Of a stretch of DNA of 64,000 nucleotides, positions 9,837-44,057 are shown piece by piece. Under the pieces are notes generated by a model. That model was not told the origin of the DNA and made no database searches. It saw only the letters and a program-made list of their open reading frames with translations. The position numbers and the translations under genes were made by a program. Each line of letters begins with the position of its first letter. The stretch's first letter is position 1. The stretch spans positions 62,001 to 126,000 of IMG/VR virus record IMGVR_UViG_3300044712_001937; one strand, 5' to 3'.

Positions 9837-9857
9837 AAAGGGAGTTTAACTCCCTTT
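9837..9857. terminator. Bidirectional terminator
   Basis: AAAGGGAGT-TTA-ACTCCCTTT between convergent genes. Confidence 0.75.
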
Positions 9858-10518
9858 ATAATGTAAAAATACTTTGGTCTTTATTCCAATTATCAAAATT
9901 AAACGGGTCAATACCCATTCTTTGTAATGTTTTTGTTGTTAGAACTTTAACTATCCTTGGTTCGATTTGCATATCTTTAATATCATTAAAGAAATAATAA
10001 AGTTTGTCAAGTTTTAAATCTTCAGGGTCTATTCCACGAAAATCCCAACCATTTACTATTTTATTATCTCTTTTTAACACTGCAAAATGTGTATATTTTG
10101 GGTTAACTCCAGTACTTTTTACTTCACTTATAGGTGAATCTATATTTAATTCATTAACAATAAAATTTTGTTGTTCATCACTTAACCACCAATTAATTAA
10201 TTCTTCATTTGAATTAAAATCACCATAATCTAATCCTAAAAAATAATTTTGAAATTTTTTTATTAATTCAGCTTTTTCATTAGGATTTTCATTTCCTTTA
10301 ACAAAATTTAATACAGATTGATACCAATTATATTCTGGAGAATTAATAGAATTAACTAATTTTGCATGACCGGGAAATTTGCTCATTATTATATTAAATG
10401 ATTCACTATTTTGAATTGGTTGTTGTTCTATATAATTTTCATTCAATTTTGATTTAAAATTTTCATTAACTTTTCCCATGACTTCAAAAAGTCTTTGTTT
10501 TGTATTTTGTTTATTCAT
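9856..10518 (-). CDS. Putative internal head protein with KQRLFEVMG leader
   Basis: N-terminus MNKQNTKQRLFEVMGKVNENFKSKLNE shared with 43262 and 43785 ORFs; late motif 10533-10541. Confidence 0.55.
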   Translation of the reverse strand: MNKQNTKQRLFEVMGKVNENFKSKLNENYIEQQPIQNSESFNIIMSKFPGHAKLVNSINSPEYNWYQSVLNFVKGNENPNEKAELIKKFQNYFLGLDYGDFNSNEELINWWLSDEQQNFIVNELNIDSPISEVKSTGVNPKYTHFAVLKRDNKIVNGWDFRGIDPEDLKLDKLYYFFNDIKDMQIEPRIVKVLTTKTLQRMGIDPFNFDNWNKDQSIFTL

Positions 10519-10544
10519 TGATTTAAATTTTATATAAATACTAA

Positions 10545-11096
10545 TTAATTTCCTTTTGTTTCATTTAAAAATGGAACAACATCTTCTTTTACAGGTACTC
10601 CTGTTATTTTTCGCCAGTAAGGTTTAAAACCTCCAATTGATTGTTTTGTTGTATCAGTAATCATATTAGCATTTTCGACTTCATAAAATCTTCTTTTTTC
10701 ACCCGAAAAATTATATTCGATAATATCACCACGATTAATTTCTAAATTTTTTTCTTCTAATTCTTTAAGATAAACTCCAAATGTAATATTTCCAGTATCA
10801 TCACGAGTTATACCACCTCTATTTTCGCCATAGTATAATTGTTTGCTTTCATCAACATTTACCATAACACTAATTTTCACAGGTGGCATAAATTTTTTGT
10901 CTTTAGATTTAGTTTGACCATATAAACTATGGGATTTAGTCTCAATAATATTAATCTTATGTATAGTAACTTCTTGAGCATTATCTGTATCAAGAAAATT
11001 TCTACCATACATTACATCAAGATTAAAAGAATTATCAGTCATAAATAAACCGTATCTATTATCTTCAAGATTTTCAACTTGTTTTTTCTTTCTCAT
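10545..11096 (-). CDS. Neck/head-closure protein (T4 gp14-like)
   Basis: Size, position next to the gp13-like gene, FMPPVKI...INRGDIIEY...FYEV pattern. Confidence 0.55.
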   Translation of the reverse strand: MRKKKQVENLEDNRYGLFMTDNSFNLDVMYGRNFLDTDNAQEVTIHKINIIETKSHSLYGQTKSKDKKFMPPVKISVMVNVDESKQLYYGENRGGITRDDTGNITFGVYLKELEEKNLEINRGDIIEYNFSGEKRRFYEVENANMITDTTKQSIGGFKPYWRKITGVPVKEDVVPFLNETKGN

Positions 11097-11098
11097 TG

Positions 11099-12217
11099 TT
11101 AAATACTAATTATAGGGAACATTGGTGGTTGATAACCACGTTCTTTATTTACATTTTCAGCAATCTTAGCACGTTCTTCAGTTAAGTTAACCTGACTTAA
11201 TTTAGTTAACTGGTCTAATATAATTTTTTCAGTATCTTCTTTTAATTTAGTTCCTTCTTCAAGTAAATGTCGATAATCCATAGTTAATTGCTTTTCAGCA
11301 ACACCAAGTTCACCAGTATAAAAACCACGAATTCCACCGATTACCATTTTTACTTTCGCAATAAGTAAATTACGTATTTGTTGACGAGCAACATCATTTA
11401 ATTTATCCCATTTCAATATTGTTGTTGGAGGGTCTGAAGGAAGTTTAATGATATCATCATTTTCTTCCATACATTTATCTCTTCCAGTATTATTAGTATC
11501 ATAATACCAATACCATACCTTTCTTCCATTATAATGTTTTCCCCATCCATCATTAATTTCATTTCGACTACCGGGTATAGGATATAAATGCAATAATTTT
11601 TCTCCTGATGCTAATCCAGTTATACGATATGTTAATGTAGATTGCATTACTCTTTGTTTTGTTCCTCTATCTTGTGCAGATAATAGTGCTGAATATGTGG
11701 GTTGAACATATGAAGCTGGACGACCAAGATAAGACCATCCTAACATTCCAGCAGACCAACCAACTGTTGTATATGGGTCAACTAACCCTCCACCTATTTC
11801 TGGTGGAGTTTCCCATAATACTTCATTAACTTCACGATTTGCAGGAATTAAATAATGTTGAGTGTTTGCAGAACATACTATATAATCACGTTTAAGTTCC
11901 CAACCAGTAGCTGCTGGAGCATTTGTGCCTAAACCAACTTGTTTAGAATAAGCATATGTAAAAGATTCCATATATTTATTTGATTTAGTAGTAAATGCAG
12001 ATAAAAAATCAGCGTTTCCACTACTTAAACCTTCTAATCCAATCCATTGTTGTTGAATTAACCAATTATTTATAATTGATGAATAATCTTCAAGTACCAT
12101 TTCATAATACGAATCCATCATTTCATCTTTTAACTCAAAAGGACGTAATGGATAACCTAATTCATGTTTTACATGAAGGTATAATTTATTTCTATCTACT
12201 GTTGTTATTAACGCCAT
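11099..12217 (-). CDS. Neck/head-tail adaptor protein (T4 gp13-like); start revised to MALITT
   Basis: KLYLHVKHELGYP...ELKDEMMD...VLEDYS start typical of gp13-like neck proteins; late motif 12243-12251. Confidence 0.6.
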   Translation of the reverse strand: MALITTVDRNKLYLHVKHELGYPLRPFELKDEMMDSYYEMVLEDYSSIINNWLIQQQWIGLEGLSSGNADFLSAFTTKSNKYMESFTYAYSKQVGLGTNAPAATGWELKRDYIVCSANTQHYLIPANREVNEVLWETPPEIGGGLVDPYTTVGWSAGMLGWSYLGRPASYVQPTYSALLSAQDRGTKQRVMQSTLTYRITGLASGEKLLHLYPIPGSRNEINDGWGKHYNGRKVWYWYYDTNNTGRDKCMEENDDIIKLPSDPPTTILKWDKLNDVARQQIRNLLIAKVKMVIGGIRGFYTGELGVAEKQLTMDYRHLLEEGTKLKEDTEKIILDQLTKLSQVNLTEERAKIAENVNKERGYQPPMFPIISI

Positions 12218-12267
12218 AATTTTATTATATTTGTATTTCAATAATAAATACTTTAAGATATTATATT

Positions 12268-12729
12268 ATGTCAAAAATTGAATATGAAATAGCTTTAAAT
12301 GAATCAGGAAGACCTTGTATTGAATTAGGTACAGATTATAAAGAAACTGCTGCTGATAAATTTTTTTGTATTGAAATAACGAGATATTTATTACAAGGAA
12401 TGTATAGTCGTAGAAGAGATGATTTAGACCAAAATACTGTAGAACAATTATTAAACTCTATCAATTTTCTTGGTCAAATTAGCGATGAAACCGCAGCATT
12501 AATTTGGAAAGGAATGAGAGAAGTAGGTGATATTGCATTTTTAACTAATAATAACTACCATATAATTGTTGAAACTCTTGAAGATTTAAATAAACTTGAC
12601 CAAAATTTAATTCTTTTTGGTGAAAAAATATTTAAAAGAAAAGAAGGATTAAAAGTGTTAGTTACTAAAGAGATGCAAATATATGAATTAGTTGGTGGTA
12701 TTGAAAATCAAAATTGGAGTAAATTATAA
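12268..12729 (+). CDS. Hypothetical protein
   Basis: 153-aa ORF coupled to the helicase. Confidence 0.55.
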   Translation: MSKIEYEIALNESGRPCIELGTDYKETAADKFFCIEITRYLLQGMYSRRRDDLDQNTVEQLLNSINFLGQISDETAALIWKGMREVGDIAFLTNNNYHIIVETLEDLNKLDQNLILFGEKIFKRKEGLKVLVTKEMQIYELVGGIENQNWSKL

Positions 12730-16785: not shown

Positions 16786-18468
16786 TTATTGTAAATCACC
16801 AATACCCCAAGTTTGTAAACCATCACATAAGATTTTACCATAATAACGGTTAAGCACCATCTTTTTAGCGTAACGTGTCATGATACCACGAATAGGAGTG
16901 AAATCGAATGGATTGTACATTACAGGAGTTAACTGCATTGGTACATAAGGAGCATAAATATATCCAGTTTCAAGAATTGAAGTACCTTTGTGACCAATTA
17001 ATATTGTATTAGCTGGTGCATATGGGTCTCTGTAAACTTGATAACGACCTGATAAGATACCGATTTTTTCAATACCCATATTATATTTATCTTGTTCAGG
17101 GTCAGCATTACTAACGTGGAAATATTCAAGGTCATCGAATACTGCAGAAACTTCAGGAGAAACTACTACCCAAGAAGCACCACCACGTAATGTTGATTTA
17201 TGAATTTGAGCTGAAATTTGGTTAACTTTAGTGATTAAAGTTTGATTCCAGTCTTTTTGAGTTCCGTAATATGCATTAGTTTGTTTACGTAAACCATTGT
17301 AATCCCAACGAGCAACCCATGCAGCACCTCTACGTAAATCACGAAGAATTTCACGGTCAATTTCTGCAGCCATTTGTTCTGATAATAAAGCAGTTAATTC
17401 AGCTTCAGCATCAATATTATGGAAAGCACTAACGTCTTGAGCTAATTCAGGAGTCCACATAGCACGCATTTTACGTGATTCTACAGATACTGTTACTTGG
17501 TCAAGTACGAATGTAACTTCAGCCATTTTTGAATCTTCTTCCATATCACTATAAGTGTTATATGTTACAGTAAATGAAGGAGTTGTTGCAGCACTCAATG
17601 CTTGATAACCATTTGTACCTGCATATGAAATGTCAGCTACAAGAACAATTTGACCAGCACTATTAACAATTGCTTGTCCGTATTTTTGAACTTTTACATT
17701 AAAAGGAATTGAATTTCCAGCAGTAATAGTTTCAGATGCATAAGGAGCAGGAGCAGTTAAATTAACTGAAGCAGTTATTTTTAATGAAGCTAAGAAAGAT
17801 TCTGTATCCATTGGAACACCAGCAGGACCTATTAATTTTCCTTGGTCAGTTGTTGAAAAACCACCAGCAGTAATAGTAATATACTTATCAGTACCAAGTG
17901 TATAAGAAGCAACACTTGTAGTTGCTGTAATAGTTAATATTTCGCCTCTTGAACGGTCGAATAGTGAAGTACCTTCATCACCATAAGAAGTAGCATAGAA
18001 AGAATCATATAATGATTTAGTTTCAAACTGAGTTCTTTCAATGTTTGCTTTATCTGCAGCATTACCATATGCACCATTAGGTGAAGTATGTTCATTACCT
18101 GAAGTAGTTGTATGAGTATTATCTAATACACGTGTACTTGTTTTAGGGTTGATGTAATATAATTTACCAATAGGTAAATTTAATGCCTGTACAGATACGA
18201 TATCATTAGCTAATAATTTAGCAAATACCCTACGAATAACAGGGAATGCAACTGTTTCAAACTGACCACTTGAAGTAGCATCAGTAGATTCGTTAATCAT
18301 GTATGATAATTGGTTTTCGAATAATTGCGCACAATTTTCTTTAACATTACCATCTAATCCTTCTAACAAACCAATTTTTTCCCAACGGTTTGTAGTAATT
18401 TCTCTTTGTTCACGAAGTTGTTTTAATCCAATATTACCAACTTCAGCACTTTCTGTTAAAAATCCCAT
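16786..18468 (-). CDS. gp23: Major capsid protein (T4 gp23-like)
   Basis: FPVIRRVF, VSVQAL, ESRKMRAMWTPELAQD, AEAELTALLSEQMAAEIDREI, YIYAPYVP, GIMTRY. Confidence 0.97.
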   Translation of the reverse strand: MGFLTESAEVGNIGLKQLREQREITTNRWEKIGLLEGLDGNVKENCAQLFENQLSYMINESTDATSSGQFETVAFPVIRRVFAKLLANDIVSVQALNLPIGKLYYINPKTSTRVLDNTHTTTSGNEHTSPNGAYGNAADKANIERTQFETKSLYDSFYATSYGDEGTSLFDRSRGEILTITATTSVASYTLGTDKYITITAGGFSTTDQGKLIGPAGVPMDTESFLASLKITASVNLTAPAPYASETITAGNSIPFNVKVQKYGQAIVNSAGQIVLVADISYAGTNGYQALSAATTPSFTVTYNTYSDMEEDSKMAEVTFVLDQVTVSVESRKMRAMWTPELAQDVSAFHNIDAEAELTALLSEQMAAEIDREILRDLRRGAAWVARWDYNGLRKQTNAYYGTQKDWNQTLITKVNQISAQIHKSTLRGGASWVVVSPEVSAVFDDLEYFHVSNADPEQDKYNMGIEKIGILSGRYQVYRDPYAPANTILIGHKGTSILETGYIYAPYVPMQLTPVMYNPFDFTPIRGIMTRYAKKMVLNRYYGKILCDGLQTWGIGDLQ

Positions 18469-18494: not shown

Positions 18495-20174
18495 TTATTT
18501 TTTACCTCTTGTTTCCACGTAATTGATAAGTTTTCTCATTTTATTAATATGAGCATCATTTGCGTAGGCTGTTTTTTCTACTACTTCATCAAGTTTTTGC
18601 TTTGAACTTGGTTGTATTGAGGTAGATACCTTTTTTTCAAAGCTTTCAGTTATAGTTTTTTTACCAACTTTCATTTCTGAAAGAATAGTTTTATATTTAT
18701 TCTGTGATTCAGTAATACTATTAACTTGTTTAAATTCGTTAATAATTTTTATTTTATCTTCTTGTGTTAATGCTAATTCTTCATTCACTAAAATATTATT
18801 TACATGAGCTAAATTAGTATTGAACACAGCCATTTCTTTTAATTGTGAACGATATTTCTCAAGAGCGTTTTTATAGCTTTCGATTAAAGTACTTGCAGAT
18901 TTTTTATATTTAATACTTTCATTTAATTTTTTAGTCAATTTCTTGTTTTCATCAATTAAACCTCCTAATTTTTTACTAACATTTTCATTTGTATTGTTTA
19001 CACTACCCAAACGTTTATGTCTACCTTGTGCAAAATCAGGAGCTGGTAAATGGTCACCTGCAACTTGTTTACTTGCACTATGAGCAATACCCATAGCTTC
19101 GTCAACAGGAGCATTTCCATCACCTAAAGTATTTGTAATATCTTCTTCTGTAATAGAAGTTTCATCGGTTACAGCAGGAGCAACTTGTTGTGATAATTGT
19201 TCTAATTCTTCGTCACTCATACCTTCTAAATTTGCAGTAATGCCTTGAATTAAAGCAGAACGGTCTATTTCAGCAATTTCTTCAGGTTCTTCTTGACTTT
19301 CTTCACCACCAAATTCACCAATAAGACCTTGTAATATTTCAACCATGTCTTTTAGTTTTTCAACAGTAGAATCTTCATTACCTTCTTCACCACCTTCAAT
19401 ATTTTCCATTCCTTCAATACCTTCATCATTATCTTCACCACCTTCACCATTTTCATTACCTTTCATACCTTCTTCACCACTTCCAGCATTGTCAAGTTCA
19501 CCACTTAAATTATCCATATTTGATATTTCATCATCAATTTCATCAATAGTGATAACTTCATCGCTGCCATCCATTTCATCTAAAGCTGTGTTAATTTCAT
19601 TCATGTCAAGACCTGTCATATCAAGTTCTTCACTAACATTAGTCATTGGTTTTCCTGAAGTTGGAGCTACAATTTTATTGTCAAATCTTTTTCCGTTATT
19701 ACTATCGGCACTATTACCAAAATTAGGAGTATCAGATTCTTTATCAGCTATAAAACTTTTTTCACGTTCTTCAAAAATTCCAGTATTTTTTGCTTTTTCA
19801 GTAAATGTGCTATCATCACGTGTATCTGTGATTTTAACATCTTCTGAAACTTTAGCAACATTCTTAGCACCTTTAGTAAAAGGTTCACCTTTGTTTACAA
19901 CCGAATTGGTTTCTTTAATTTGTTCTTTCATAACAGGTTCTTCATTATTTGTATTTGTATTATCTACTTCAGTAGATTCTTCGCTTTCGTCCAATTTTTT
20001 ATAGGACTCTTTTTTAGATTTATTTTTAGTAATTTCTTCTTTCAATAAATTATTAAACTTATCTGGAAATTCATCTACTAACTTTTTCTTTGCATTAGCT
20101 TCTGCTGTTTCCAAAATTGCGTTATAGTCGCTTAAAGCTTCTTTTATTATTGATGTTTTTTTATCGTCTTTCAT
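18495..20174 (-). CDS. Prohead core/scaffold protein (gp22-like)
   Basis: Acidic coiled-coil protein between protease and MCP genes; many (I/L/V)xE sites. Confidence 0.75.
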   Translation of the reverse strand: MKDDKKTSIIKEALSDYNAILETAEANAKKKLVDEFPDKFNNLLKEEITKNKSKKESYKKLDESEESTEVDNTNTNNEEPVMKEQIKETNSVVNKGEPFTKGAKNVAKVSEDVKITDTRDDSTFTEKAKNTGIFEEREKSFIADKESDTPNFGNSADSNNGKRFDNKIVAPTSGKPMTNVSEELDMTGLDMNEINTALDEMDGSDEVITIDEIDDEISNMDNLSGELDNAGSGEEGMKGNENGEGGEDNDEGIEGMENIEGGEEGNEDSTVEKLKDMVEILQGLIGEFGGEESQEEPEEIAEIDRSALIQGITANLEGMSDEELEQLSQQVAPAVTDETSITEEDITNTLGDGNAPVDEAMGIAHSASKQVAGDHLPAPDFAQGRHKRLGSVNNTNENVSKKLGGLIDENKKLTKKLNESIKYKKSASTLIESYKNALEKYRSQLKEMAVFNTNLAHVNNILVNEELALTQEDKIKIINEFKQVNSITESQNKYKTILSEMKVGKKTITESFEKKVSTSIQPSSKQKLDEVVEKTAYANDAHINKMRKLINYVETRGKK

Positions 20175-20277: not shown

Positions 20278-20997
20278 TTATAACAAAAACTTGTCAATAG
20301 CTGTAATAATCTTATTTTCATCTTCTTTTAAATAAATTCCATTTTTATTTACATAATTTTCACCGAAACTATTATTAGTACCAGTTTGACTAATTGGAAA
20401 TAAAAATGCACCGGGTGTACTTGGTGTTGCAACTAAGTCAAAACCAATTAATTCGAAATCATTCTGTACTAAATTTTCACCATTAATTTCCTTTAATGTA
20501 CCGACACCACGGGAACTAATACCTAATTTTATTTTATTTTGTAGATATAAAACGATTTTATCACCTATAACTGAACAAACACCATATTTAATATATCCCG
20601 GACTTACAATTAATTTTAATTGTCCATATAACACATTTTCCTCATCTCCCTTACCCCACCACATTTTAGTAATTAAATGTGAAATGTTTTGTAAGGAAAT
20701 GATGCTTGAATCCGGATGGTCAGCTTCTGAAACTGCACTATTATTATCAACTAATTGTTGATACATTTGTGCTTGTGGTACTAATACGTCTTTAGGATAT
20801 ATCCTACCATTTTTATTTTTAACACCCCATTTTTGTAATACACAGTTAACTAATACTGGTTCATTTGGTTTTAATACAAATCCTTCAGTTATTATTGTAG
20901 GATTCAATTCAGAGCTTAAAAAACCTGCGTCATGCTCAATAAGAATCATTTTTTCGTTGAAACGATTTTCGCAATATGTGTTAATATATTTAATCAT
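20278..20997 (-). CDS. gp21: Prohead protease (T4 gp21-like, S77)
   Basis: KNKNGRIYPKDVL, SEADHP, LGISSRGVG, FDLVATPSTPGA. Confidence 0.95.
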   Translation of the reverse strand: MIKYINTYCENRFNEKMILIEHDAGFLSSELNPTIITEGFVLKPNEPVLVNCVLQKWGVKNKNGRIYPKDVLVPQAQMYQQLVDNNSAVSEADHPDSSIISLQNISHLITKMWWGKGDEENVLYGQLKLIVSPGYIKYGVCSVIGDKIVLYLQNKIKLGISSRGVGTLKEINGENLVQNDFELIGFDLVATPSTPGAFLFPISQTGTNNSFGENYVNKNGIYLKEDENKIITAIDKFLL

Positions 20998-27017: not shown

Positions 27018-27046
27018 AAAAAGGGACTTAAATAAGTCCCTTTTTT
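27017..27046. terminator. Bidirectional terminator
   Basis: A6-GGGACTTA AA TAAGTCCC-T6. Confidence 0.85.
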
Positions 27047-27810
27047 AATTCGTGTAAACTAATTATATCATCATCCACAGTTTCGGGATTATATTTCATT
27101 TCATTAATTTTATTTATTGCTTTATTAATACTTTCAATATTTGCATTAGCTTTAGCATTTTCTAATAACATAATATTATTAGTTTTATAATCTTTTAACA
27201 TTGATTCTTTTTGTTTTTTCGTTGATTTTATCAATTGCAATAATAATGTTTTATCGTCTTCATTTAATCCTTCATATTTTTCATTAAATTTATCAATAGC
27301 AATTTCAATTACAGCTTCATCCACGTGCTCAACAGTTTCTACCAATTCAACTAAATTCTTTTTGGGCGATTTTATATGATTTAAAACTACAGTAAATGAT
27401 TCATGAATTTTATCAACATCAACTTTATCGTAATCATTTAATGATTCTCTAATTAAACAATTAATAGCATTATATAATTCAACTTTTTCTTCATCAATAG
27501 ATGTTGTGTTTTCATTAATAAATGAATTTAATTTAGCATGTTCATTATCAATTTCATCAATAGTGTAAATTTCAAATTGTTTTATATTATTATCAATATA
27601 ACGAGTTGCCATCATATCGTTATCAATATGTTTATTTTCGATGTTGTTATAAATTTTAAACTCCAATTGTAATATTGGTGAATTTTTCACAACATCAAAA
27701 AATTTTGAAGTAAGTTTCTTTGATTCTTCATTTAAAGTTTTACTGAAATAAGAATCCTTTAATTTATTTGAAATTAATAGATTAACAACACCTATGTTAA
27801 TATTTTTCAT
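27028..27810 (-). CDS. Conserved head-module hypothetical protein
   Basis: 260-aa helical ORF downstream of the portal gene; late motif 27830-27838. Confidence 0.55.
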   Translation of the reverse strand: MKNINIGVVNLLISNKLKDSYFSKTLNEESKKLTSKFFDVVKNSPILQLEFKIYNNIENKHIDNDMMATRYIDNNIKQFEIYTIDEIDNEHAKLNSFINENTTSIDEEKVELYNAINCLIRESLNDYDKVDVDKIHESFTVVLNHIKSPKKNLVELVETVEHVDEAVIEIAIDKFNEKYEGLNEDDKTLLLQLIKSTKKQKESMLKDYKTNNIMLLENAKANANIESINKAINKINEMKYNPETVDDDIISLHELKKGLI

Positions 27811-27891: not shown

Positions 27892-29883
27892 CTATTCATT
27901 TAAATCGATGTTTTCAATATCTTCAATTTCAATATCTTCTACAATAATATTTTTTTGTTCAGTATTAATACTTTCGCCTTTTTTTAATAATTCATCAATT
28001 TGATTTATCATTAACTCAGCATTTTTATTTAAATTTTCATTAATTTTATTATTTTCAAATATAATTCTTTTATTTATTTGAGTATTTCTTTTTTCAGTTT
28101 CAGAATGACTACCAAAAATCATTTCTTCAACATGTTTATTATAATTAAAAGTTTCTTTATTTTCAGCCATTGGTGGAGTTCCACCCATTTCACCACCTGC
28201 TGGTGGCATACCGCCTCCTACTGGTGCTGGTGCACCACCCATTGGTGCTGGTGGCATACCGCCCATTTCACCACCTGCTGGTGGTATACCACCTCCTACT
28301 GGTGCTGGTGGCATACCACCTGTAGCACCCGACATATTCATTGCATCTTCTGGAACTCCAAATCTTGCATCAATATCTTTAAATAAACCAGATTTTTTAA
28401 TTGAAATTGGAGAATCTGCAAGTTCTTGCATCACAACTTTTTCCATTTTTTGTTGTTTCAAATCTTCAACAATTTCTCTATCACTCATATTGAATAATAT
28501 TCGTTTAGCATTAGTATGAGACATTGCAGCAATACCACCTTCACCACGAGTTAATTCAGTATATGTTTGTGCTTTTTCACGGAATAATTCAGCTTTTAAT
28601 TGTTCTGCTTGTGTTGAAGGATTTGTTAATGTAAGAGTAAAACTATTTAAATCTTCACCACTATAACCCAATAAATATAAATGAATCATTGCCATTTTAT
28701 TGAGTTCTTGAATAATTGCTTGTTGGATACGATTAATTTTCTTAGCAAAACGAATATCATATTGAGCTAAATTTTTTCCACCACCTGCTGCGTCTTGAAA
28801 ACTTAAAAACGGTTTTGGAATTCCTAATCCAATAAATAAATTATCTCTTAGATATTCAATATCTTGAATTTGGTCAAGATTAGATGCACCCGGAAGTGTA
28901 TCAACTCCAGTTGCAGTATTTGCATTACGAACAGGTATGAAATAATCTTCATCATTACCTAATATATTAAATCTATAATCGATTTGACCATCATTAGGTG
29001 ATACTTGTGCAACTTTTTTAAATTTAGTTGCTACTTTATAGATATAATCTTCAATATCATCTTCATCAATATTACCTACATCAATTTTAAATACCTTTTT
29101 TTCCCCAGCACGTATAATACGATAAGTTAACATGGCATCTTCAGCCATAACTAATTGCCTAAATACTCTACGTACTTTATTTAACACAGATGAACCATAT
29201 GGTAAATATTTATCATCACCAAGTAGCCTAAAATGCGCAATTTCAAAAACGTTAAATTCATCACCAGTCATTCTTTCTTTAAATTTTATAATTGGTTTAC
29301 CGTTTTGAACTCTTTCAATTCTTTCTATTTCATAATTAACTAATTGCTTAACATGACTAATACCTTTTTTACGTTCTCCATATAGTAAAACAAAATTATC
29401 GCCATACTTTACAGTATTTCTTACCCAAAAAGGTAAATTAACGTTAATATCGATAGTATTATAGAAAAAATCTTCTAATAATAGTTTTATTCTTTCTTTA
29501 TTAGAATTTATATTTAACATTTTACCATTTAATCCAATAGTAGTACATTCTTCCATAAATAAATCCAATGCACTTGAAATAATTGGATAATATTCCATAC
29601 CTTCATAATCAATATAAGCTGGAAGTCTGGCTGCTTCATATTGTAATGCTTTTTGAAAACCTCTATCTGTTGTTCTGAAAAATTTATTTTGAAGTTCTCT
29701 TTTTTGTTCTAATTCTAAACCTTTACGATGTATTTCTTCAGGACTATTACCTTTAATAATAATTTTGCTTGTATTATTTGTAGGAATAATTTGAGCTTGA
29801 TTAGTTTGATTTTGAAAACCATCAAGATTAAGCATTTTATTTAGGTTTTGATATATAGTTCCCTTTTTATCTTGTTCAGCCAT
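27892..29883 (-). CDS. gp20: Portal protein (T4 gp20-like)
   Basis: YEGMEYYPIISSALD, KYLPYGSSVL, EDAMLTYRIIRAGEKKVFKIDVGN, EDYFIP, LPGASNL. Confidence 0.95.
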   Translation of the reverse strand: MAEQDKKGTIYQNLNKMLNLDGFQNQTNQAQIIPTNNTSKIIIKGNSPEEIHRKGLELEQKRELQNKFFRTTDRGFQKALQYEAARLPAYIDYEGMEYYPIISSALDLFMEECTTIGLNGKMLNINSNKERIKLLLEDFFYNTIDINVNLPFWVRNTVKYGDNFVLLYGERKKGISHVKQLVNYEIERIERVQNGKPIIKFKERMTGDEFNVFEIAHFRLLGDDKYLPYGSSVLNKVRRVFRQLVMAEDAMLTYRIIRAGEKKVFKIDVGNIDEDDIEDYIYKVATKFKKVAQVSPNDGQIDYRFNILGNDEDYFIPVRNANTATGVDTLPGASNLDQIQDIEYLRDNLFIGLGIPKPFLSFQDAAGGGKNLAQYDIRFAKKINRIQQAIIQELNKMAMIHLYLLGYSGEDLNSFTLTLTNPSTQAEQLKAELFREKAQTYTELTRGEGGIAAMSHTNAKRILFNMSDREIVEDLKQQKMEKVVMQELADSPISIKKSGLFKDIDARFGVPEDAMNMSGATGGMPPAPVGGGIPPAGGEMGGMPPAPMGGAPAPVGGGMPPAGGEMGGTPPMAENKETFNYNKHVEEMIFGSHSETEKRNTQINKRIIFENNKINENLNKNAELMINQIDELLKKGESINTEQKNIIVEDIEIEDIENIDLNE

Positions 29884-33950: not shown

Positions 33951-36668
33951 TTATACACCACCCATTGAAGTTTTACCTCCAGTACCACCAGATGCAAAAG
34001 GATTTTCAGTTCTTAAAGGTGTGTATATGTAATTACCACCTTGTAAACCAAAACTTGGATTTTTTAATTTATCCATTTCATAACCTTGTTGCATTAGTGC
34101 ATATTTTTGTTCAGTACTCATTTTCATTGCTGCTTGTTTTCTTGCTCCAGCCATCAATGATTGTGAAAATATTTTATTAAAAGCATCGTTAATTGAATTT
34201 GGGTCAGCTTGATTTATTTTTTCAAATTTACTTGCATTACTTGAAAATGTATCCAAAAAACCTTCATCAATATTTCCTTTAAAATTTTTGAATTGTTCAT
34301 CAATAACAATATCAAGTTTTTTCAATGCTTCAGGTTTACTACTTTCATTTAAAGTAGATTTTCTTAAACCAGCTTTTTCTTCAATACGATTACGAATATA
34401 TCGTCTAAGTTTAACTTCAGATTCACTCATAATTGGTTTATCAGTTTCAGCACCTTCACGTTTTACATTTTTCCACATTGCTGCAGCAGCTACAGCTTTA
34501 GGGTCTTTAGCACCACTTGCTTTTGCTTTTGCTTCAACATCCTTAAATCCTTTACCCGGTTTACCGATATCTTTACCTGCTTTTGCTTGTTTTACAACTT
34601 CAGATTTTTTTTCTTTTGATAATCCAGCACTTGGTTTTTCAGTTTCTTTAATCACACCCATATTGGTAGCTGATTTAGCTTTAAACTTTTCTTGTGATGG
34701 AACACCATCAGTAGTTGTTTTAAATTTTTGATTTGCAGGAGCATTAAATGCAACTCCATTATCAATACCAGTTGCAATTTTACCTTGTGGTGCAACACCT
34801 TTTTGTTTTGGGTTTAATATAGCTTCTTTAATACCTTTTTTTACAGGTTTATTAAATGCCACACCATTAGCCATTCCAGTTTTTTTACCACCTTGTGGTG
34901 CAACACCTTTTTGTTTTTTATTTAATATAGCTTCAGATACAACACCAAGAGATTGTGCAGGAGGTGCAAAACCAACATTAGGTTGAGTTTCAACTCCATC
35001 AACATCTTCTTCAACAGTTTTAATTCCAGCACCTGCGCTTGTTCCAGCAATATTTGCTTGACCACCACGAGTAAGTTGATTAGTAATACCTTGAATAACT
35101 TTAGTAGTATCAATAGGTGTTTGTCCAGCTTTTTGAAGTCTTTGATTTATAGCATTAATTTGTTGTGCAAATTGATTAGCTAAATCATTAGCTTTTTTCA
35201 TTTCACCAGCAACTTCGCCACTATGATATGTTTGTTTAACTGCAGTTGCAGCATTTCCAATACCTTGTGCAACATTTTGTCCAGCTTGTTTTACATTTTG
35301 AACTGCTTGACCCACTTTTTCAGCACCTGCCTGATAAGCATTTTTAGCAACATTTTTAGCAGCATTACCAACAGCTTGTCCACCTTTAGCAATTCCACCA
35401 ACAGCAGCTTTACCTAAATTAGATAATCCACCCCATAATTCATCAATTTGACCAGAAATATCATCACCTTCATTCATTTGACCAGCATAAGGTGTCAAAT
35501 TATCTGCATATTCTTCATGTCCATAATCATTTTTCAATGAATTAATTATTTCAGGATTTGAAAGTAATGCTACTAATTTAAAATCAGGTTTATTTTCTCC
35601 GTCATTATAACCATTTGCAAATCTACTAATAACATTAGTTTTTTCTTCATCACCACATTCCATTAAAGATTCTTTAGTATAACCTAATGATTCTGCAAAT
35701 TTACCAAAACCTTGACATTCCAAACATTCACCTTCACCAATTTCAGCAGCTTTTTCTTCAGGTTCAACATCAAGATTTGCAATTTCTTCATCAGGTACTA
35801 CTTTAAGTATAATATCGGCAAGACCTTTTCTATCACTAATATCCATTTCTTTAAAATCATCTTTGAAAGGAGCTAAAAAAGTTTTAACATAACCTTGAAC
35901 TTGTTGAGGTTCTAATTCTGTTTTTCTTAATAAATTAGTTAATTTACCTAATTTAGATTCAATATCTTGTACAGTTAAACTTTTTTGGTCATCTGGAGTC
36001 ATAGCATCACCAGTTTCATCACCTTCAGGTTCAGGTGTTTCTTCACCACCATCTAATTCACCTTCAGGTTCAGGTGCTACTTCAGGTTCGGGAGTTTCTT
36101 CACCACCATCTAATTCACCTTCAGGTTCAGGTGCTACTTCAGGTTCGGGAGTTTCTTCACCACCACCATCTAAACCAGTTTCAGGTTCAGGTGTTGGAGC
36201 TGGTTCAGGTGCTACTTCAGGTGCAGTTGCAGCAGCTTGTGCATCGTTTAACCCTTTTTCAGCAGCATTAATTTCTTCTTCAGCACCTTCTTCAACACTT
36301 TCACCAAGTAATCTTTTTTTACCACCATTTGGATTTGCTTTATATTTAGTTGTTTCATTAATAGTATGGAACAACATATTTCTTTGTTTTTCAGCTTCAC
36401 TTAATGAGTGAAATTGATAATTAGTAACATTTGACAACCCACCAATATATGCAAAATCAGCAACATTAGGGTCTTGTTTAAGACCAGCTTTTTTTATGTA
36501 GTAATTATGATTTTCTTTAATAATACCATAAGCAACTCCATCAGATGCTCTTTTATAGTCGATTAAACTACCTAAATTACGTGTAGATTCTTTTATAGAA
36601 ACTTTTTTTACTTCAGCTAATGTATTTAGTCTTTGGAAAAACGCTTCTTTTGAATTATTCTTTTTCAT
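33951..36668 (-). CDS. Large acidic prohead core/internal protein with repeats
   Basis: 905 aa, low complexity, many (I/L/V/M)xE sites; late motif 36712-36720. Confidence 0.6.
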   Translation of the reverse strand: MKKNNSKEAFFQRLNTLAEVKKVSIKESTRNLGSLIDYKRASDGVAYGIIKENHNYYIKKAGLKQDPNVADFAYIGGLSNVTNYQFHSLSEAEKQRNMLFHTINETTKYKANPNGGKKRLLGESVEEGAEEEINAAEKGLNDAQAAATAPEVAPEPAPTPEPETGLDGGGEETPEPEVAPEPEGELDGGEETPEPEVAPEPEGELDGGEETPEPEGDETGDAMTPDDQKSLTVQDIESKLGKLTNLLRKTELEPQQVQGYVKTFLAPFKDDFKEMDISDRKGLADIILKVVPDEEIANLDVEPEEKAAEIGEGECLECQGFGKFAESLGYTKESLMECGDEEKTNVISRFANGYNDGENKPDFKLVALLSNPEIINSLKNDYGHEEYADNLTPYAGQMNEGDDISGQIDELWGGLSNLGKAAVGGIAKGGQAVGNAAKNVAKNAYQAGAEKVGQAVQNVKQAGQNVAQGIGNAATAVKQTYHSGEVAGEMKKANDLANQFAQQINAINQRLQKAGQTPIDTTKVIQGITNQLTRGGQANIAGTSAGAGIKTVEEDVDGVETQPNVGFAPPAQSLGVVSEAILNKKQKGVAPQGGKKTGMANGVAFNKPVKKGIKEAILNPKQKGVAPQGKIATGIDNGVAFNAPANQKFKTTTDGVPSQEKFKAKSATNMGVIKETEKPSAGLSKEKKSEVVKQAKAGKDIGKPGKGFKDVEAKAKASGAKDPKAVAAAAMWKNVKREGAETDKPIMSESEVKLRRYIRNRIEEKAGLRKSTLNESSKPEALKKLDIVIDEQFKNFKGNIDEGFLDTFSSNASKFEKINQADPNSINDAFNKIFSQSLMAGARKQAAMKMSTEQKYALMQQGYEMDKLKNPSFGLQGGNYIYTPLRTENPFASGGTGGKTSMGGV
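36037..36165. repeat. Perfect 57-bp tandem repeat (about 2.3 copies) encoding EPEVAPEPEGELDGGEETP
   Basis: Unit at 36037 and 36094, partial copy at 36151. Confidence 0.9.
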
Positions 36669-37819: not shown

Positions 37820-38131
37820 TTACAATTCTAATAATGAATTAATTAATTTTTGTTGGTTTTCAGATAATGCAGGTGTTGACTGTGATTTAAATGCTTTTGC
37901 TTTTTTTTCAACTAATAATGAATATAATACATCAATAACCTCATATTCATTTTCTTGTAGTAATCTATCAATAGCATTTTTAATATTTCCAACTTTAACT
38001 AAATATGCTCTATCATATTCTGCAGTTTCGGGATTATCAATAGTCCAATTTTTAAACGCTTCATGAATTTTTAATTCAGGGTTTAATTTTACCATATTTT
38101 CGAATAGTAGTTTTTTACTATCTTTTTTCAT
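37820..38131 (-). CDS. Putative internal head protein with KLLFENM leader (start revised)
   Basis: MKKDSKKLLFENMVKLNPELKIHE; late motif 38148-38156. Confidence 0.55.
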   Translation of the reverse strand: MKKDSKKLLFENMVKLNPELKIHEAFKNWTIDNPETAEYDRAYLVKVGNIKNAIDRLLQENEYEVIDVLYSLLVEKKAKAFKSQSTPALSENQQKLINSLLEL

Positions 38132-38206
38132 AAAAAATATATTTTTATATAAATACATTATTATTAATTAAAGTGTTATTGTATTTATATAAAATTCTCA
38201 TACGAA

Positions 38207-42110: not shown

Positions 42111-42185
42111 CTGGGTGTTCCACAGATGGATATATGGGCGTGCCTTGGAAGCACGTGTTCGTGAGTTCGAATCTCACCACTCAGA
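42111..42185 (+). tRNA. tRNA-Pro(UGG)
   Basis: Acceptor CTGGGTG/CACTCAG; CGTGC-CTTGGAA-GCACG; TTCGAAT T-loop. Confidence 0.85.
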
Positions 42186-42200
42186 CTAAATTGTTTTAAT

Positions 42201-42273
42201 GGTGTTTGAAGCATTAAGGTGATGTGCTTGACTGTGAATCAAGAGAAAACGGGTCAGTACCGTTCTTACACCC
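42201..42273 (+). tRNA. tRNA-His(GUG), atypical T-loop
   Basis: CTTGA-CTGTGAA-TCAAG; acceptor has mismatches; T-loop GTCAGTA. Confidence 0.7.
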
Positions 42274-42332
42274 AAATTATCGGTTAATTAACCTATAAAA
42301 TATATTTATAGGCATTTTAAAAGATAAAATTA

Positions 42333-42407
42333 CGGAATGTTGAGGAATTGGTTTCCCTCGCCTACCTTGGACGTAGGAGCATGTCGGTTCGAGTCCGGTC
42401 ATTCCGA
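42333..42407 (+). tRNA. tRNA-Pro(UGG)
   Basis: CGGAATG/CATTCCG; CCTAC-CTTGGAC-GTAGG. Confidence 0.88.
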
Positions 42408-42416
42408 CTATTAAAT

Positions 42417-42492
42417 CGAGTAATTGGGGAGTTGGTCACCCCGCCACATTTGGGATGTGGAGAACTCGCAGGTTCGAATCCTGCTTACTCGA
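42417..42492 (+). tRNA. tRNA-Pro(UGG)
   Basis: CGAGTAA/TTACTCG; CCACA-TTTGGGA-TGTGG. Confidence 0.88.
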
Positions 42493-42494
42493 CT

Positions 42495-42567
42495 GTATTA
42501 GTGGACTGTTGGTAGTCCGTCAAGATTGTGGCTCTTGCTGACGGGGGTTCGATTCCCCTCTAATACC
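42495..42567 (+). tRNA. tRNA-His(GUG)
   Basis: GTATTAG/CTAATAC, C discriminator; CAAGA-TTGTGGC-TCTTG. Confidence 0.85.
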
Positions 42568-42573
42568 CTAAAT

Positions 42574-42657
42574 TGTCCTTTGGTGGAATTGGTTTAAACA
42601 CAACTGTCTTTGAAGCAGTAACCTTCGGGTTTGCAGGTTCGAGTCCTGCAAGGACAA
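42574..42657 (+). tRNA. tRNA with Gln(UUG) anticodon and long variable arm
   Basis: TGTCCTT/AAGGACA; ACTGT-CTTTGAA-GCAGT; variable arm ACC-TTCG-GGT. Confidence 0.85.
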
Positions 42658-42664
42658 CTAAAAT

Positions 42665-42736
42665 TACTCAATAGTGTAATGGCTACCACACAACACTTTG
42701 ACTGTTGTAATTCTGGTTCGAGTCCAGATTGAGTAA
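42665..42736 (+). tRNA. tRNA-Gln(UUG)
   Basis: TACTCAA/TTGAGTA; CAACA-CTTTGAC-TGTTG. Confidence 0.88.
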
Positions 42737-42776
42737 CAATTTAAATAAAATTGCGTATATTACTAAAAAAACAATT

Positions 42777-43198
42777 ATGAATTATAATCTTTTCCTTGAT
42801 GATGTAAGAGAACCTGATGAAGTATTTGGATATACTAATAATCAGCTATATTTAATAGGTTGGAAAATAGTTCGAAATTATGATGAATTCATTAAATGTA
42901 TTTCTGAAAATGGAATTCCTAATGCTATTAGTTTTGACCATGATTTAGGACATGAACATTATAAAATACAAACCAATATTAGCTATAATCAATTTAAAGA
43001 AAAAACTGGTTTTCATTGCGCAAAATGGTTGATTGATTATTGTATTGTATTGATAATAAATTAGAACTTCCAAACACTATTTTAATACATTCATGGAATA
43101 AAGTGGGTAGTGCAAACATTAAGTCGTTATTTGATACATATAATAAAGTAAAAAATATTAACACTCCTAACAATTATCCACCAATACCTTATTCTTAA
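42777..43198 (+). pseudogene. Cyclic-phosphate-processing receiver-like protein, frameshifted by a TATTG x3 tract
   Basis: LFLDDVREP...ISFDHDLG...TGFHCAKWL; removing one TATTG unit (43038-43052) restores IDNKLELPNTILIHSWNKVGSANIKSLF. Confidence 0.7.
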
Positions 43199-43261
43199 GA
43201 ATAGAATAAATTCATATCGGATTTTTATAATATTTATTGTATTTATTATAAATTTCTGATT

Positions 43262-43756
43262 ATGGAATATAAAAATAATAAACAAAAACTTTTTGAAGTT
43301 ATCGCAAGACTTGATAAAACATTCAAACCTAAATTGAATGAAAGTAATGATAAATCAAACAAAAAGGGATTCCATACCAATATTGAAGAAGATACTATTA
43401 ATAATAATAACTTTAGAAAAGTATTATATACTGGTCAAAATTTACAATTAGTTTTAATGGCTTTAAAACCCGGTGAAGAAATTGGTGAAGAAACTCATCC
43501 AAATATTGACCAATTTTTTAGAATTGATGCTGGTAATGGTAAATGTATTATTAATGATAATGAATATAATTTAAAAAATGGTGATTGTATTATAGTTCCC
43601 GCAGGTTCTAAACATAATATAATTAATAATGGTAAGAAAGAATTAAAATTATATACCATATATTCACCTCCACATCATAAAGATGGTATTATCTTTAAAA
43701 CCAAAGACGAAGCTGAAAATAGTAAAGAAAAATTTAATGGTAAAACAACAGAATAA
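43262..43756 (+). CDS. Cupin-domain protein with KQKLFEV leader
   Basis: LKPGEEIGEETHPNIDQFFRIDAG...IVPAGSKHNIIN...LYTIYSPPHH; late motif 43239-43247. Confidence 0.85.
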   Translation: MEYKNNKQKLFEVIARLDKTFKPKLNESNDKSNKKGFHTNIEEDTINNNNFRKVLYTGQNLQLVLMALKPGEEIGEETHPNIDQFFRIDAGNGKCIINDNEYNLKNGDCIIVPAGSKHNIINNGKKELKLYTIYSPPHHKDGIIFKTKDEAENSKEKFNGKTTE

Positions 43757-43784
43757 ATAATATTAAAAATAATAAATTAGCAAT

Positions 43785-44057
43785 ATGAAAGACAGTAAAC
43801 AAAGATTATTTGAAGTAATGGGAAGACTTGATAAAACTTTTAAACCCAAAAATGTTCTTAATGAATGGAATTTCGATAAGAAAAAAGATGATGATTCTGA
43901 AGAAGAAAAAAAAGAAGGTGAAGAAACTCAAGAACATGAAGAATCTGAAACACCTGCTGAAGAAAAAAAAGAACATAAAGAAGATAAAGAATTAGACGAA
44001 GCTGATGAAGTAAAACCTAAAATCCCTGTAAATGCTATTGCAAAGGTGGGTAAATAA
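43785..44057 (+). CDS. Small acidic protein with KQRLFEVMG leader
   Basis: MKDSKQRLFEVMGRLDKTFKPKNVLNE followed by an E/K/D-rich tail. Confidence 0.65.
   Translation: MKDSKQRLFEVMGRLDKTFKPKNVLNEWNFDKKKDDDSEEEKKEGEETQEHEESETPAEEKKEHKEDKELDEADEVKPKIPVNAIAKVGK

What the first reader, a model, noticed from the sequence alone, without database searches (positions are those of the whole stretch)
9856..44057. Shared N-terminal leader (KQ+LFEV..+L...F+.KLNE) on unrelated late proteins: a probable capsid-targeting tag
9856 (KQRLFEVMGKVNENFKSKLNE), 43262 (KQKLFEVIARLDKTFKPKLNE), 43785 (KQRLFEVMGRLDKTFKPKNVLNE) and, more loosely, 37820 (KKLLFENMVKLNPELKIHE) and 33951 (KEAFFQRLNTLAEVKKVSIKE) share a leader of about 25 aa ending in (L/I)xE, followed by different cargo. 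Established: T4 internal proteins carry a short capsid-targeting sequence that gp21 removes after (I/L)xE. Inference: a modular address tag loads diverse effectors into the head for injection.
Basis: partly seen in the sequence, partly recalled or inferred. Interest (0 to 1): 0.7.

Follow-up and report, generated by a model that had tools for sequence, protein, structure and literature searches.

The report
Probable capsid-targeting leader in jumbo phage
An uncultured 365-kb phage with T4-type head genes puts the same basic leader of about 26 residues, ending in Leu-Asn-Glu, on at least eight unrelated proteins, and its relatives put it on hundreds more; it is most likely a removable address tag that loads cargo proteins into the capsid, which would let packaged or injected phage proteins be listed from sequence alone.

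Summary
The 905-aa protein does not pass any leader profile. Four more carriers lie outside the window in the same 364.7-kb genome.

A profile of the leader finds 474 protein clusters among 1.84 billion representatives, almost all at residue 1. The consensus is MKKDSKQRLFEVMGRLDKTFKPKLNE. Conservation collapses right after the Glu, and the cargos fall into at least 55 unrelated groups with shuffled domains.

The genome has a T4-type head module: Gp23 capsid protein, gp20 portal, scaffold, and a gp21/S77 protease with aligned His/Ser/Asp. All five relatives tested share it and have 5-11 leader genes each. The capsid protein has a conserved I-N-E where T4 gp23 is cut.

Seventeen of 150 hits are polyproteins with a second, internal leader. 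AlphaFold2 puts LNE in a disordered linker. Leader genes share a promoter-like motif with head genes.

Best explanation: a long, two-part analogue of the T4 capsid-targeting sequence, cut by the prohead protease after LNE. Packaging, cleavage and injection are untested. I rate it a new variant of a known kind.

The parts
10438..10518 (-). Leader of protein A (27 aa, MNKQNTKQRLFEVMGKVNENFKSKLNE)
   Evidence: Translation. Leader HMM E = 1e-15 to 5e-16.
9856..10437 (-). Cargo of protein A (193 aa, pI 4.9). It has two domains that occur in other orders and combinations behind the leader in relatives.
   Evidence: No Pfam or PHROG family.
43262..43342 (+). Leader of protein B (27 aa, ends KPKLNE)
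   Evidence: In the AlphaFold2 model residues 6-17 are a helix and residues 21-36 are disordered.
43343..43756 (+). Cargo of protein B: linker plus Cupin_2 domain
   Evidence: Pfam Cupin_2, E = 1.5e-16. Close homologues occur with this leader (28 of 120), with other short N-terminal tags, with lipoprotein signal peptides, or with no extension.
43785..43865 (+). Leader of protein C (27 aa, ends NVLNE)
   Evidence: E = 7e-18.
43866..44057 (+). Cargo of protein C: 63-aa acidic protein (WNFDKKK...IPVNAIAKVG). In relatives it is often the first unit of two-leader polyproteins.
38060..38131 (-). Leader of protein G (24 aa, MKKDSKKLLFENMVKLNPELKIHE), a divergent member
   Evidence: HMM E = 3e-10 and 7e-9. 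Database homologue P0128 starts at this Met.
37820..38059 (-). Cargo of protein G (79 aa, pI 5.0)
   Evidence: No Pfam or PHROG family.
20278..20997 (-). Prohead protease of the T4 gp21 / Peptidase_S77 family, the proposed enzyme that removes the leader
   Evidence: phrog_207, E = 5e-35. PF03420, E = 2e-17. It is 28% identical to T4 gp21 (E = 5e-18), with DHP/NHP, SSRG and the following Asp aligned.
18495..20174 (-). Putative scaffold or core protein (559 aa, acidic centre) lying between the protease and capsid genes. It has conserved KKLNE and IINE sites.
   Evidence: Gene order matches T4 21-22-23. Alignment of six genomes. No family hit.
16786..18468 (-). Major capsid protein (Gp23 family). 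The predicted propeptide is residues 1-60, ending in I-N-E (nt 18289-18468).
   Evidence: Pfam Gp23, E = 1e-73. Aligned with T4 gp23. 'SYMINE' is invariant in six genomes and lies 16 residues before the VIRRVF block, which matches T4 MVRRAI.
27892..29883 (-). Portal protein (T4 gp20 family)
   Evidence: Pfam Portal_T4, E = 5e-61.
27028..27810 (-). 260-aa protein next to the portal, in the position of T4 gp67/gp68. Its N-terminus ...KLKDSYFSKTLNE weakly resembles the second half of the leader.
   Evidence: HMM not significant (E = 6). It is a candidate only.
10533..10541 (-). Promoter-like motif GTATTTATW, 23 nt upstream of gene A
43239..43247 (+). Promoter-like motif GTATTTATW, 23 nt upstream of gene B. 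Gene C follows 28 nt after B.
38148..38156 (-). Promoter-like motif GTATTTATW, 25 nt upstream of the Met at 38131 of gene G
33951..36668 (-). It was examined and is not accepted as a leader carrier.

Best explanation
The leader is a cleavable N-terminal address tag. It is a long, two-part analogue of the T4 capsid-targeting sequence.

Proposed mechanism, all of it inferred:
1. The genes are transcribed together with head genes.
2. The basic, amphipathic helix (KQRLFEVMGRLDKTF, leader pI about 9.5) docks the precursor onto the assembling prohead core. The core contains a scaffold with a strongly acidic centre.
3. The capsid shell closes around the core.
4. The gp21-family prohead protease cuts after the near-invariant L-N-E, and possibly also after the invariant L-F-E. 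This frees the cargo inside the head and lets the leader fragments escape.
5. Polyproteins with an internal leader are cut into separate cargos in the same way.
6. The cargo stays in the virion with the DNA and is probably delivered into the host at infection. Cargos include a cupin, an ImmA/IrrE-like zinc peptidase, a small acidic protein and many orphan domains.

What is shown: the tag itself, its modularity, its sharp boundary, its phage-clade distribution, and its co-occurrence with a T4-type protease and head.
What is inferred: docking, cleavage, packaging and injection.
For: 1. Eight otherwise unrelated proteins of the genome carry the leader at their N-terminus.
2. The leader profile finds 474 clusters (E <= 1e-3) among 1.84e9 representative proteins. 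In 145 of the best 150 the first leader starts within the first 12 residues.
3. Information content is about 4 bits at L-N-E (LNE 143, INE 12 of 162) and at most 1.1 bit from the next residue on.
4. The 154 cargos form 55 BLAST groups, 43 of them singletons, with domain shuffling.
5. The same cupin and M78-like peptidase cores occur without the leader, with other tags, or with bacterial lipoprotein signals.
6. The window holds a T4-type head module, including a gp21-family protease with aligned catalytic residues.
7. All five related jumbo contigs tested (246-349 kb) have this protease, a Gp23 capsid protein and 5-11 leader ORFs each.
8. The published gp21 rule is cleavage after L/I-x-E, and T4 propeptides of 10-19 aa act as capsid-targeting sequences (PMC9026906, PMC5694885).
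9. The capsid protein has an invariant I-N-E60 just before its conserved mature core, near where T4 gp23 is cut. The scaffold has conserved KKLNE and IINE.
10. Seventeen of 150 hits have a second, internal leader without a Met. In about ten it is preceded by (M/L/I)-Y-E-(N/S). One such ORF was verified as a single stop-free frame.
11. AlphaFold2 gives a helix at 6-17 and disorder at 21-36, which includes LNE, before a confident cupin fold.
12. Genes A, B, D and G share GTATTTATW 22-25 nt upstream with the scaffold, portal, terminase and tail-sized genes. Of 109 sites, 69 lie 10-70 nt before a start codon, against 4.7 expected.
13. The leader is absent from 50,697 GenBank phage records. Among 185,579 cellular species genomes it occurs once, on a 353-kb contig.
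Against: - There is no direct evidence of packaging, cleavage or injection. The whole clade is uncultured.
- The leader has no detectable sequence similarity to the T4 CTSs and is about 2.5 times longer.
- Seven of the eight cargos are acidic to near-neutral (pI 4.5-6.5; D is 7.8), unlike the basic T4 internal proteins.
- [LI]NE is not depleted inside the cargos (41 observed, 25 expected). A protease that cut every such site would also cut the cargo.
- A few family members have lost LNE (3 of 165 leaders; cupins P0179, P0214 and P0274).
- The protease-leader complex prediction gave no answer.
- No T4 gp55 homologue was found, so 'late' rests on a shared motif only.
Confidence: 0.65

Rival explanations
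1. The tag does target proteins to the prohead and is cleaved, but the cargos are assembly or core components: size determination, scaffold accessories, charge balance for DNA. They are degraded or retained. They are not effectors injected into the host.
For: - Protein C and its many homologues are small, very acidic, low-complexity proteins. They resemble T4 core proteins and internal peptides more than enzymes.
- The carriers at genome 19535-21676 sit in one operon with a Pro/Gly-rich coiled-coil protein.
- T4 core proteins gp22, gp67 and gp68 are also gp21 substrates (PMC9026906).
Against: Some cargos are enzymes with cellular homologues, namely the cupin and the ImmA/IrrE-like Zn peptidase. 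The cargo repertoire is hypervariable between close relatives. That pattern fits accessory, host-directed proteins better than essential assembly parts.
Confidence: 0.25
2. The leader is a retained N-terminal module that is not cleaved. It would be a basic amphipathic helix that brings diverse proteins to a common partner in the infected cell, such as DNA, the membrane, a replication or assembly site, or a chaperone, without entry into the capsid.
For: The leader is basic and predicted helical. There is no experimental cleavage evidence. [LI]NE is not avoided in the cargos.
Against: - The near-invariant L-N-E sits exactly at the conservation boundary, in a predicted disordered linker.
- The motif matches the gp21 rule and the capsid protein's own I-N-E.
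- Internal copies occur between cargos in polyproteins.
- It is restricted to genomes with a T4-type head and protease.
- It is co-regulated with head genes.
Confidence: 0.12
3. The repeat is a DNA-level element. It could be a shared promoter/5' region, a translational enhancer or a recombination cassette border, with the peptide as a by-product.
For: A conserved promoter-like motif precedes several of the genes. In T-even phages the conserved CTS-coding ends are thought to help swap internal-protein genes (own knowledge).
Against: - Synonymous codon variation occurs at conserved residues.
- Members in operon-internal positions lack the upstream motif (C, E, F, H).
- Internal in-frame copies lack a start codon.
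- Protein-level conservation holds across hundreds of divergent clusters.
Recombination at the leader may still help cassette exchange as a side effect.
Confidence: 0.03
4. It is a secretion or bacteriocin/RiPP-type leader removed by a C39-like or signal peptidase.
For: One related contig carries a Peptidase_C39 gene near a leader gene.
Against: The leader has no hydrophobic core, no lipobox and no double-glycine motif. Cargos reach 586 aa and include folded enzymes. No C39 gene lies near the carriers in this window.
Confidence: 0.02

Closest known systems
T4 capsid-targeting sequences (CTS) of the internal proteins IPI, IPII, IPIII and of Alt, removed by the gp21 prohead protease
   Same: - A short N-terminal tag shared by otherwise unrelated proteins.
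- It ends in (L/I)-x-Glu.
- The genome encodes a gp21-family protease inside a gp20/gp21/gp22/gp23-type head module.
- Cargo genes are hypervariable between relatives.
- Part of the repertoire lies beside a tRNA island, as T4 ipI does.
   Different: - 23-29 aa instead of 10-19 aa.
- No detectable sequence similarity to MKTYQEFIAE, MKTFKEF... or MELITELFDE.
- Two invariant Glu sites (LFE and LNE), usually 15 residues apart.
- P2 is fixed as Asn.
- Internal copies occur in polyproteins.
- Cargos are mostly acidic.
- The scale is far larger: at least 474 clusters.
- No experimental evidence.
N-terminal propeptides of inner-body and ejection proteins of phiKZ-like giant phages (phiKZ gp175, SPN3US gp245 proteases)
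   Same: Jumbo phages in which a diverged gp21 homologue cuts many head proteins after Glu. The propeptides are thought to target proteins into the prohead, and propeptides have several cut sites (PMC5694885, PMC9026906).
   Different: Their motif is (S/A/G)-x-E and the propeptides are often longer than 100 aa. These are similar only between paralogues, not one portable consensus tag. Their head genes are not recognisably Gp23 or Portal_T4 by Pfam, whereas here they are.
Delta (propeptide) domain of the T4-type major capsid protein
   Same: The phage's own capsid propeptide contains LFENQ...MINE, that is an L-F-E followed by I-N-E. This is the same pair of motifs as in the leader (LFEVM...LNE). 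It is also a scaffold-contacting, protease-removed segment in T4.
   Different: The spacing differs: 9 residues between the two Glu in the capsid protein against 15 in the leader. There is no significant alignment. The resemblance may be chance and was not tested further.
Marker motifs of secretion-system effectors (for example MIX for type VI effectors), a conceptual analogue recalled from own knowledge
   Same: A short conserved N-terminal marker on polymorphic cargo that allows effectors to be found from sequence.
   Different: A different machine, with no cleavage logic. It is only an analogy for how the tag could be used.

Membership tests
T4-type CTS / internal-protein system | The same short sequence sits at the extreme N-terminus of otherwise unrelated proteins | tested here: met
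   Eight carriers in the genome with unrelated cargos. In 145 of the best 150 database hits the first leader starts within the first 12 residues.
T4-type CTS / internal-protein system | The tag ends in the gp21 cleavage motif (L/I)-x-Glu | tested here: met
   LNE 143, INE 12, and other (L/I/M)-x-E 7 of 162 leaders. Conservation drops right after the Glu. The rule is taken from PMC9026906.
T4-type CTS / internal-protein system | The genome encodes a gp21-family (Peptidase_S77) prohead protease with catalytic His/Ser/Asp | tested here: met
   Window 20278-20997(-): phrog_207 at 5e-35, PF03420 at 2e-17, and 28% identity to T4 gp21 with the catalytic motifs aligned.
T4-type CTS / internal-protein system | T4-type prohead (gp23 capsid protein, gp20 portal, scaffold core) into which the tag would target | tested here: met
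   Gp23 at 1e-73 and Portal_T4 at 5e-61. A scaffold-sized gene lies between the protease and capsid genes.
T4-type CTS / internal-protein system | Sequence or length like the T4 CTSs (10-19 aa, MKTYQEFIAE type) | tested here: not met
   The leader HMM scores at most 0.1 bit on T4 IPI/II/III, Alt, gp24, gp67 and gp68. The leader is 23-29 aa.
T4-type CTS / internal-protein system | The tag is necessary and sufficient for incorporation into proheads | not testable with these tools
   This needs a cultured phage or a packaging assay. The complex prediction gave no answer.
T4-type CTS / internal-protein system | The tag is removed by the prohead protease, and mature cargo is present in virions and ejected | not testable with these tools
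   No proteome exists. Indirect support only: the disordered LNE linker, the capsid I-N-E and the polyprotein junctions.
phiKZ-like giant-phage propeptides | Cleavage motif (S/A/G)-x-Glu and long propeptides specific to paralogues | tested here: not met
   P3 is Leu or Ile in 160 of 162 leaders. It is one portable consensus of 26 aa.
Sec/Tat/lipoprotein signal peptides | Hydrophobic core of 10 or more residues, a lipobox or a twin-arginine motif | tested here: not met
   The consensus MKKDSKQRLFEVMGRLDKTFKPKLNE has no hydrophobic stretch. True lipoprotein signals are seen on bacterial homologues of the cupin cargo for contrast.
Double-glycine bacteriocin/RiPP leaders | A GG/GA cleavage motif and a dedicated C39 peptidase or transporter | tested here: not met
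   No GG at the boundary. Cargos reach 586 aa.

The most novel reading that the evidence does not exclude
Huge phages with T4-type proteases may use lineage-specific, sequence-searchable 'packaging codes' that all end in (L/I)-N-E. Two were seen here: the 26-aa KQRLFEVM...LNE tag of this clade, and the MKLVREHINEKF..SDPIxDMGIG tag of a 405-kb lineage. Both occur at N-termini and between the units of polyproteins. If so, the prohead protease would release whole sets of cargo inside the head. The packaged and injected proteome of uncultured phages, hundreds of orphan families, could then be read directly from metagenomes.
Probability: 0.3. Interest if true: 0.8.

Novelty: new variant of a known kind. 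Interest (0 to 1): 0.62.

Why it matters
- If the tag works as proposed, it marks which proteins an uncultured jumbo-phage clade carries in its capsid. That gives a list of at least 474 cargo clusters, mostly orphans, that are prime candidates for early host take-over and counter-defence functions.
- It would extend the T4 CTS principle, known from a handful of T-even proteins, to a distant lineage. The tag there is much longer, two-part and extremely conserved, and it appears in polyprotein precursors.
- It offers a portable tag for loading foreign proteins into large capsids.
- It makes a simple, falsifiable prediction for metaproteomics: N-termini that start right after LNE.

Tried and rejected
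- **Complex prediction.** Protease plus residues 1-40 of protein C scored 0.00, verdict 'no answer'. It is not evidence either way.
- **Depletion test.** [LI]NE is not depleted in 154 cargos (41 observed, 25 expected). It is enriched genome-wide too (153 against 102). [LI]xE is slightly low in cargos (z = -2.1) and high genome-wide (z = +5.7). Inconclusive.
- **Leader search in cultured phages.** tblastn of the leader against 50,697 GenBank phage records found nothing, so no published virion proteome can be used.
- **Text search.** The motif appears in no relevant open-access paper or preprint; the single match was an unrelated paper on nuclear export signals.
- **Late sigma factor.** The T4 gp55 late sigma factor was not found in the genome, so the shared upstream motif cannot be called a T4-type late promoter.
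- **905-aa protein.** Rejected as a carrier.
- **p260.** The protein at 27028-27810 is only weakly leader-like and not significant.
- **Cargo annotation.** Pfam and PHROGs on the cargos gave only the cupin, a DUF5661 and weak sub-threshold hits. The ESM Atlas gave an IrrE/M78 lead for protein E but nothing for protein A.
- **T4 similarity.** The leader HMM shows no similarity to the T4 CTSs.
- **Alignment-based locus search.** The search for related loci with the leader alignment failed for lack of a conserved stretch. It was repeated with a single protein.

Full report
**Setting**

The window is bases 62001-126000 of a 364,702-bp virus record with 26% G+C and direct terminal repeats. It holds a T4-type head module on the minus strand:
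- terminase, 29955-32033
- portal, 27892-29883 (Portal_T4, E = 5e-61)
- a 260-aa protein, 27028-27810
- a homing endonuclease, 21012-21689
- prohead protease, 20278-20997
- a 559-aa scaffold-like protein, 18495-20174
- major capsid protein, 16786-18468 (Gp23, E = 1e-73)

The protease matches phrog_207 (E = 5e-35) and Pfam Peptidase_S77 (E = 2e-17). It is 28% identical to T4 gp21, with the His (DHP/NHP), Ser (SSRG) and following Asp motifs aligned.

**The observation**

Translation confirms the leader at the N-termini of four proteins:
- A, 9856-10518(-)
- B, 43262-43756(+)
- C, 43785-44057(+)
- G, 37820-38131(-), in a looser form

An HMM of the leader was run against all 1255 stop-to-stop ORFs of the genome. 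It scores A-C at E = 1e-16 to 1e-18 and G at 3e-10 to 7e-9. It also finds four more carriers outside the window:
- D, genome 138458-138757
- F, E and H, three consecutive genes at genome 19535-21676

The 905-aa protein (33951-36668) is not detected (E = 4.6). In its orthologues conservation runs on past the supposed end of the tag, so I do not accept it.

The eight cargos are unrelated to each other. Synonymous codon differences at conserved residues (21 of 82 codon pairs) show that selection acts on the peptide.

**How widespread the leader is**

A profile of the eight leaders was searched against 1.84 billion representative proteins. It finds 474 clusters at E <= 1e-3. In 145 of the best 150 the first leader starts within the first 12 residues. 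The consensus is MKKDSKQRLFEVMGRLDKTFKPKLNE.

Two glutamates are essentially invariant, in L-F-E and in L-N-E. They are 15 residues apart in 122 of 162 leaders. The terminal tripeptide is LNE in 143 and INE in 12 of 162. Information content falls from about 4 bits at L-N-E to at most 1.1 bit at the next position. One caveat applies: these hits were selected by the profile, so conservation inside it is partly circular. The sharp drop at the boundary is not.

Behind the leader, 154 cargo segments fall into 55 BLAST groups, 43 of them singletons. Small domains recur in different orders.

The cupin core of B has thousands of close homologues. Among the best 120:
- 28 carry this leader.
- Others carry different short N-terminal tags.
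- Others carry Bacteroidota-style lipoprotein signal peptides.
- Others carry nothing.

The same holds for E, an HExxH protein whose homologues JGI names ImmA/M78 peptidase. Of 120 homologues, 34 carry the leader and many start directly at the core. The tag is therefore a portable add-on.

**Distribution**

IMG/VR holds 52 loci with the leader. Several are on 246-349-kb contigs. Within about 6 kb, 37 of 56 loci have two to four leader genes.

Five large relatives each have 5-11 leader ORFs. All five have the same protease (58-83% identity) and a Gp23 capsid protein.

No record among 50,697 GenBank phage genomes has the leader. Among 185,579 cellular species genomes it occurs once, on a 353-kb contig of a MAG that is probably a misbinned phage. 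No relevant open-access paper holds the motif; the single text match was an unrelated paper on nuclear export signals.

**Arguments for cleavage**

- T4 gp21 cuts after L/I-x-E. N-terminal propeptides of 10-19 aa on IPI-III and Alt are capsid-targeting sequences (PMC9026906, PMC3012670, PMC5694885). The T4 sequences themselves were read from the T4 record.
- The capsid protein of this phage and of five relatives has an invariant SYMINE ending at residue 60. That is 16 residues before the block VIRRVF, which aligns with T4 MVRRAI. This is near where gp23 is matured.
- The scaffold has conserved KKLNE and IINE sites, though these lie in a region that is conserved throughout.
- Seventeen of the best 150 hits contain a second leader inside the polypeptide, without a Met. 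In about ten cases it follows (M/L/I)-Y-E-(N/S) by 5-12 residues. One such ORF was confirmed as a single stop-free frame in its contig. These look like polyproteins whose units are separated by cleavable propeptides.
- AlphaFold2 on B with 24 homologues gives a helix at residues 6-17 and a disordered stretch at 21-36 that contains LNE. A confident cupin barrel begins at about residue 41.

**Expression**

GTATTTATW occurs 109 times in the genome. Sixty-nine sites lie 10-70 nt upstream of a same-strand start codon, against 4.7 expected, with a peak at 22-26 nt. The motif precedes A, B (C follows B by 28 nt), D and G. It also precedes the scaffold, portal, terminase, p260, the 1733-aa protein and several tail-sized genes. 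It does not directly precede the helicase, thymidylate synthase or ribonucleotide reductase genes of the window.

This supports co-regulation with structural genes. No gp55 homologue was found, so calling these genes 'late' remains an inference.

**What did not help**

- The complex prediction gave no answer.
- [LI]NE is not depleted in the cargos.
- Most cargos have no family.
- The leader has no detectable similarity to the T4 CTSs.

**Mechanism proposed**

Shown: a portable, protein-level N-terminal module with a sharp end at (L/I)-N-E, restricted to a clade of jumbo phages that all have a gp21-type protease and a T4-type head.

Inferred:
1. The basic amphipathic helix (leader pI 9.2-9.8) binds the prohead core, perhaps the acidic centre of the scaffold.
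2. After shell closure the protease cuts at LNE and perhaps at LFE.
3. The cargo stays in the head and may be ejected with the DNA.

I put 0.65 on targeting plus cleavage. I put less on the further claim that the cargos are injected effectors. A quarter of the probability goes to the reading that they are core or assembly components.

**Comparison and novelty**

Functionally this looks like the T4 CTS/internal-protein system. Four of the defining features that sequence can test are met. The sequence/length criterion is not met, and the two experimental criteria cannot be tested here.

It differs from the T4 system in several ways:
- length
- two-part architecture
- a fixed Asn at P2
- polyprotein forms
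- acidic cargos
- scale

I rate it a new variant of a known kind.

It matters because it turns 'which proteins ride in the capsid' into a sequence search for an uncultured clade. It also gives a directly testable prediction: N-termini that begin right after LNE.

Noticed in passing
L066:417-2466, L067:8905-17206, and L074-L153 (for example IMGVR_UViG_3300027899_000001, 405,016 bp = G006): Another huge-phage lineage has its own repeated leader, MK(L/I)V(R/K)E(H/N)INEKFxE(E/D)SDPIxDMGIG. It sits on many unrelated proteins, at N-termini and inside polyprotein-like ORFs. The pattern matched 106 stretches of IMG/VR DNA, including 14 matches within 13.7 kb of one contig. G006 and G009 carry a Peptidase_S77 domain in a 787-aa ORF. 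In this family conservation continues after I-N-E, so its logic may differ.
   Followed up: partly
window 40345-40902(-), 52904-53338(-), 60204-60725(-); genome 165512-168574(+), 304973-305587(-): Five otherwise unrelated proteins start with M-x(3-7)-I-I-(N/K)-E-(E/V)-(I/F). All have GTATTTATW 13-26 nt upstream. This may be a second, short, T4-CTS-like tag in the same genome. The pattern was chosen post hoc: 6 observed against about 1 expected.
   Followed up: partly
window 21791, 20217, 27838, 29915, 32056, 10541, 38156, 43239 and 101 other sites in the genome: Promoter-like motif GTATTTATAnnAAA. Of 109 copies, 69 lie 10-70 nt upstream of a start codon (4.7 expected), most at 22-26 nt. It precedes head, tail-sized, leader and several homing-endonuclease genes.
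   Followed up: partly
L063:2527-4314 (G002) and L064:4653-6581 (G004): In two relatives the prohead protease ORF is 595-642 aa. The two homologous halves are separated in frame by about 1 kb. This is probably an intein inside the protease gene.
   Followed up: no
window 21816-27017 (+): A 1733-aa ORF sits on the opposite strand inside the head module. Its C-terminus is endolysin-like (phrog_291, E = 1e-32), and the promoter-like motif lies upstream. It may be a virion-associated lysin or ejection protein. It has no leader.
   Followed up: no
window 42111-58784: A tRNA island with 25 tRNA genes, many duplicated, and a tmRNA (49992-50351). Leader genes B and C sit inside it, between tRNA-Gln and tRNA-Asp. 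T4 ipI likewise lies next to the T4 tRNA cluster.
   Followed up: no
genome 20971-21441 (L181:4972-5442, minus strand): Leader cargo E has an HELVHH zinc-peptidase motif. Its look-alikes are named ImmA/IrrE (M78) peptidases. A packaged repressor-cleaving type of peptidase would be an unusual virion cargo.
   Followed up: partly
genome 21664-22392 (L181:5664-6392, minus strand): The 242-aa Pro/Gly-rich protein just upstream of carriers F, E and H begins MEKNDNNLNE. That is a 10-residue N-terminus ending in L-N-E, the length of a T4 CTS.
   Followed up: no
window 21012-21689 (-): A homing endonuclease gene (phrog_314 and an HNH family) sits just upstream of the protease gene on the minus strand, inside the head module. 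T4 similarly has segD beside gene 23.
   Followed up: no
L073 (CAVXME010000002.1, 353,325 bp): The only 'cellular' genome with the leader is a 353-kb contig binned into a Terriglobales MAG. It is probably a misbinned jumbo phage of this clade.
   Followed up: no
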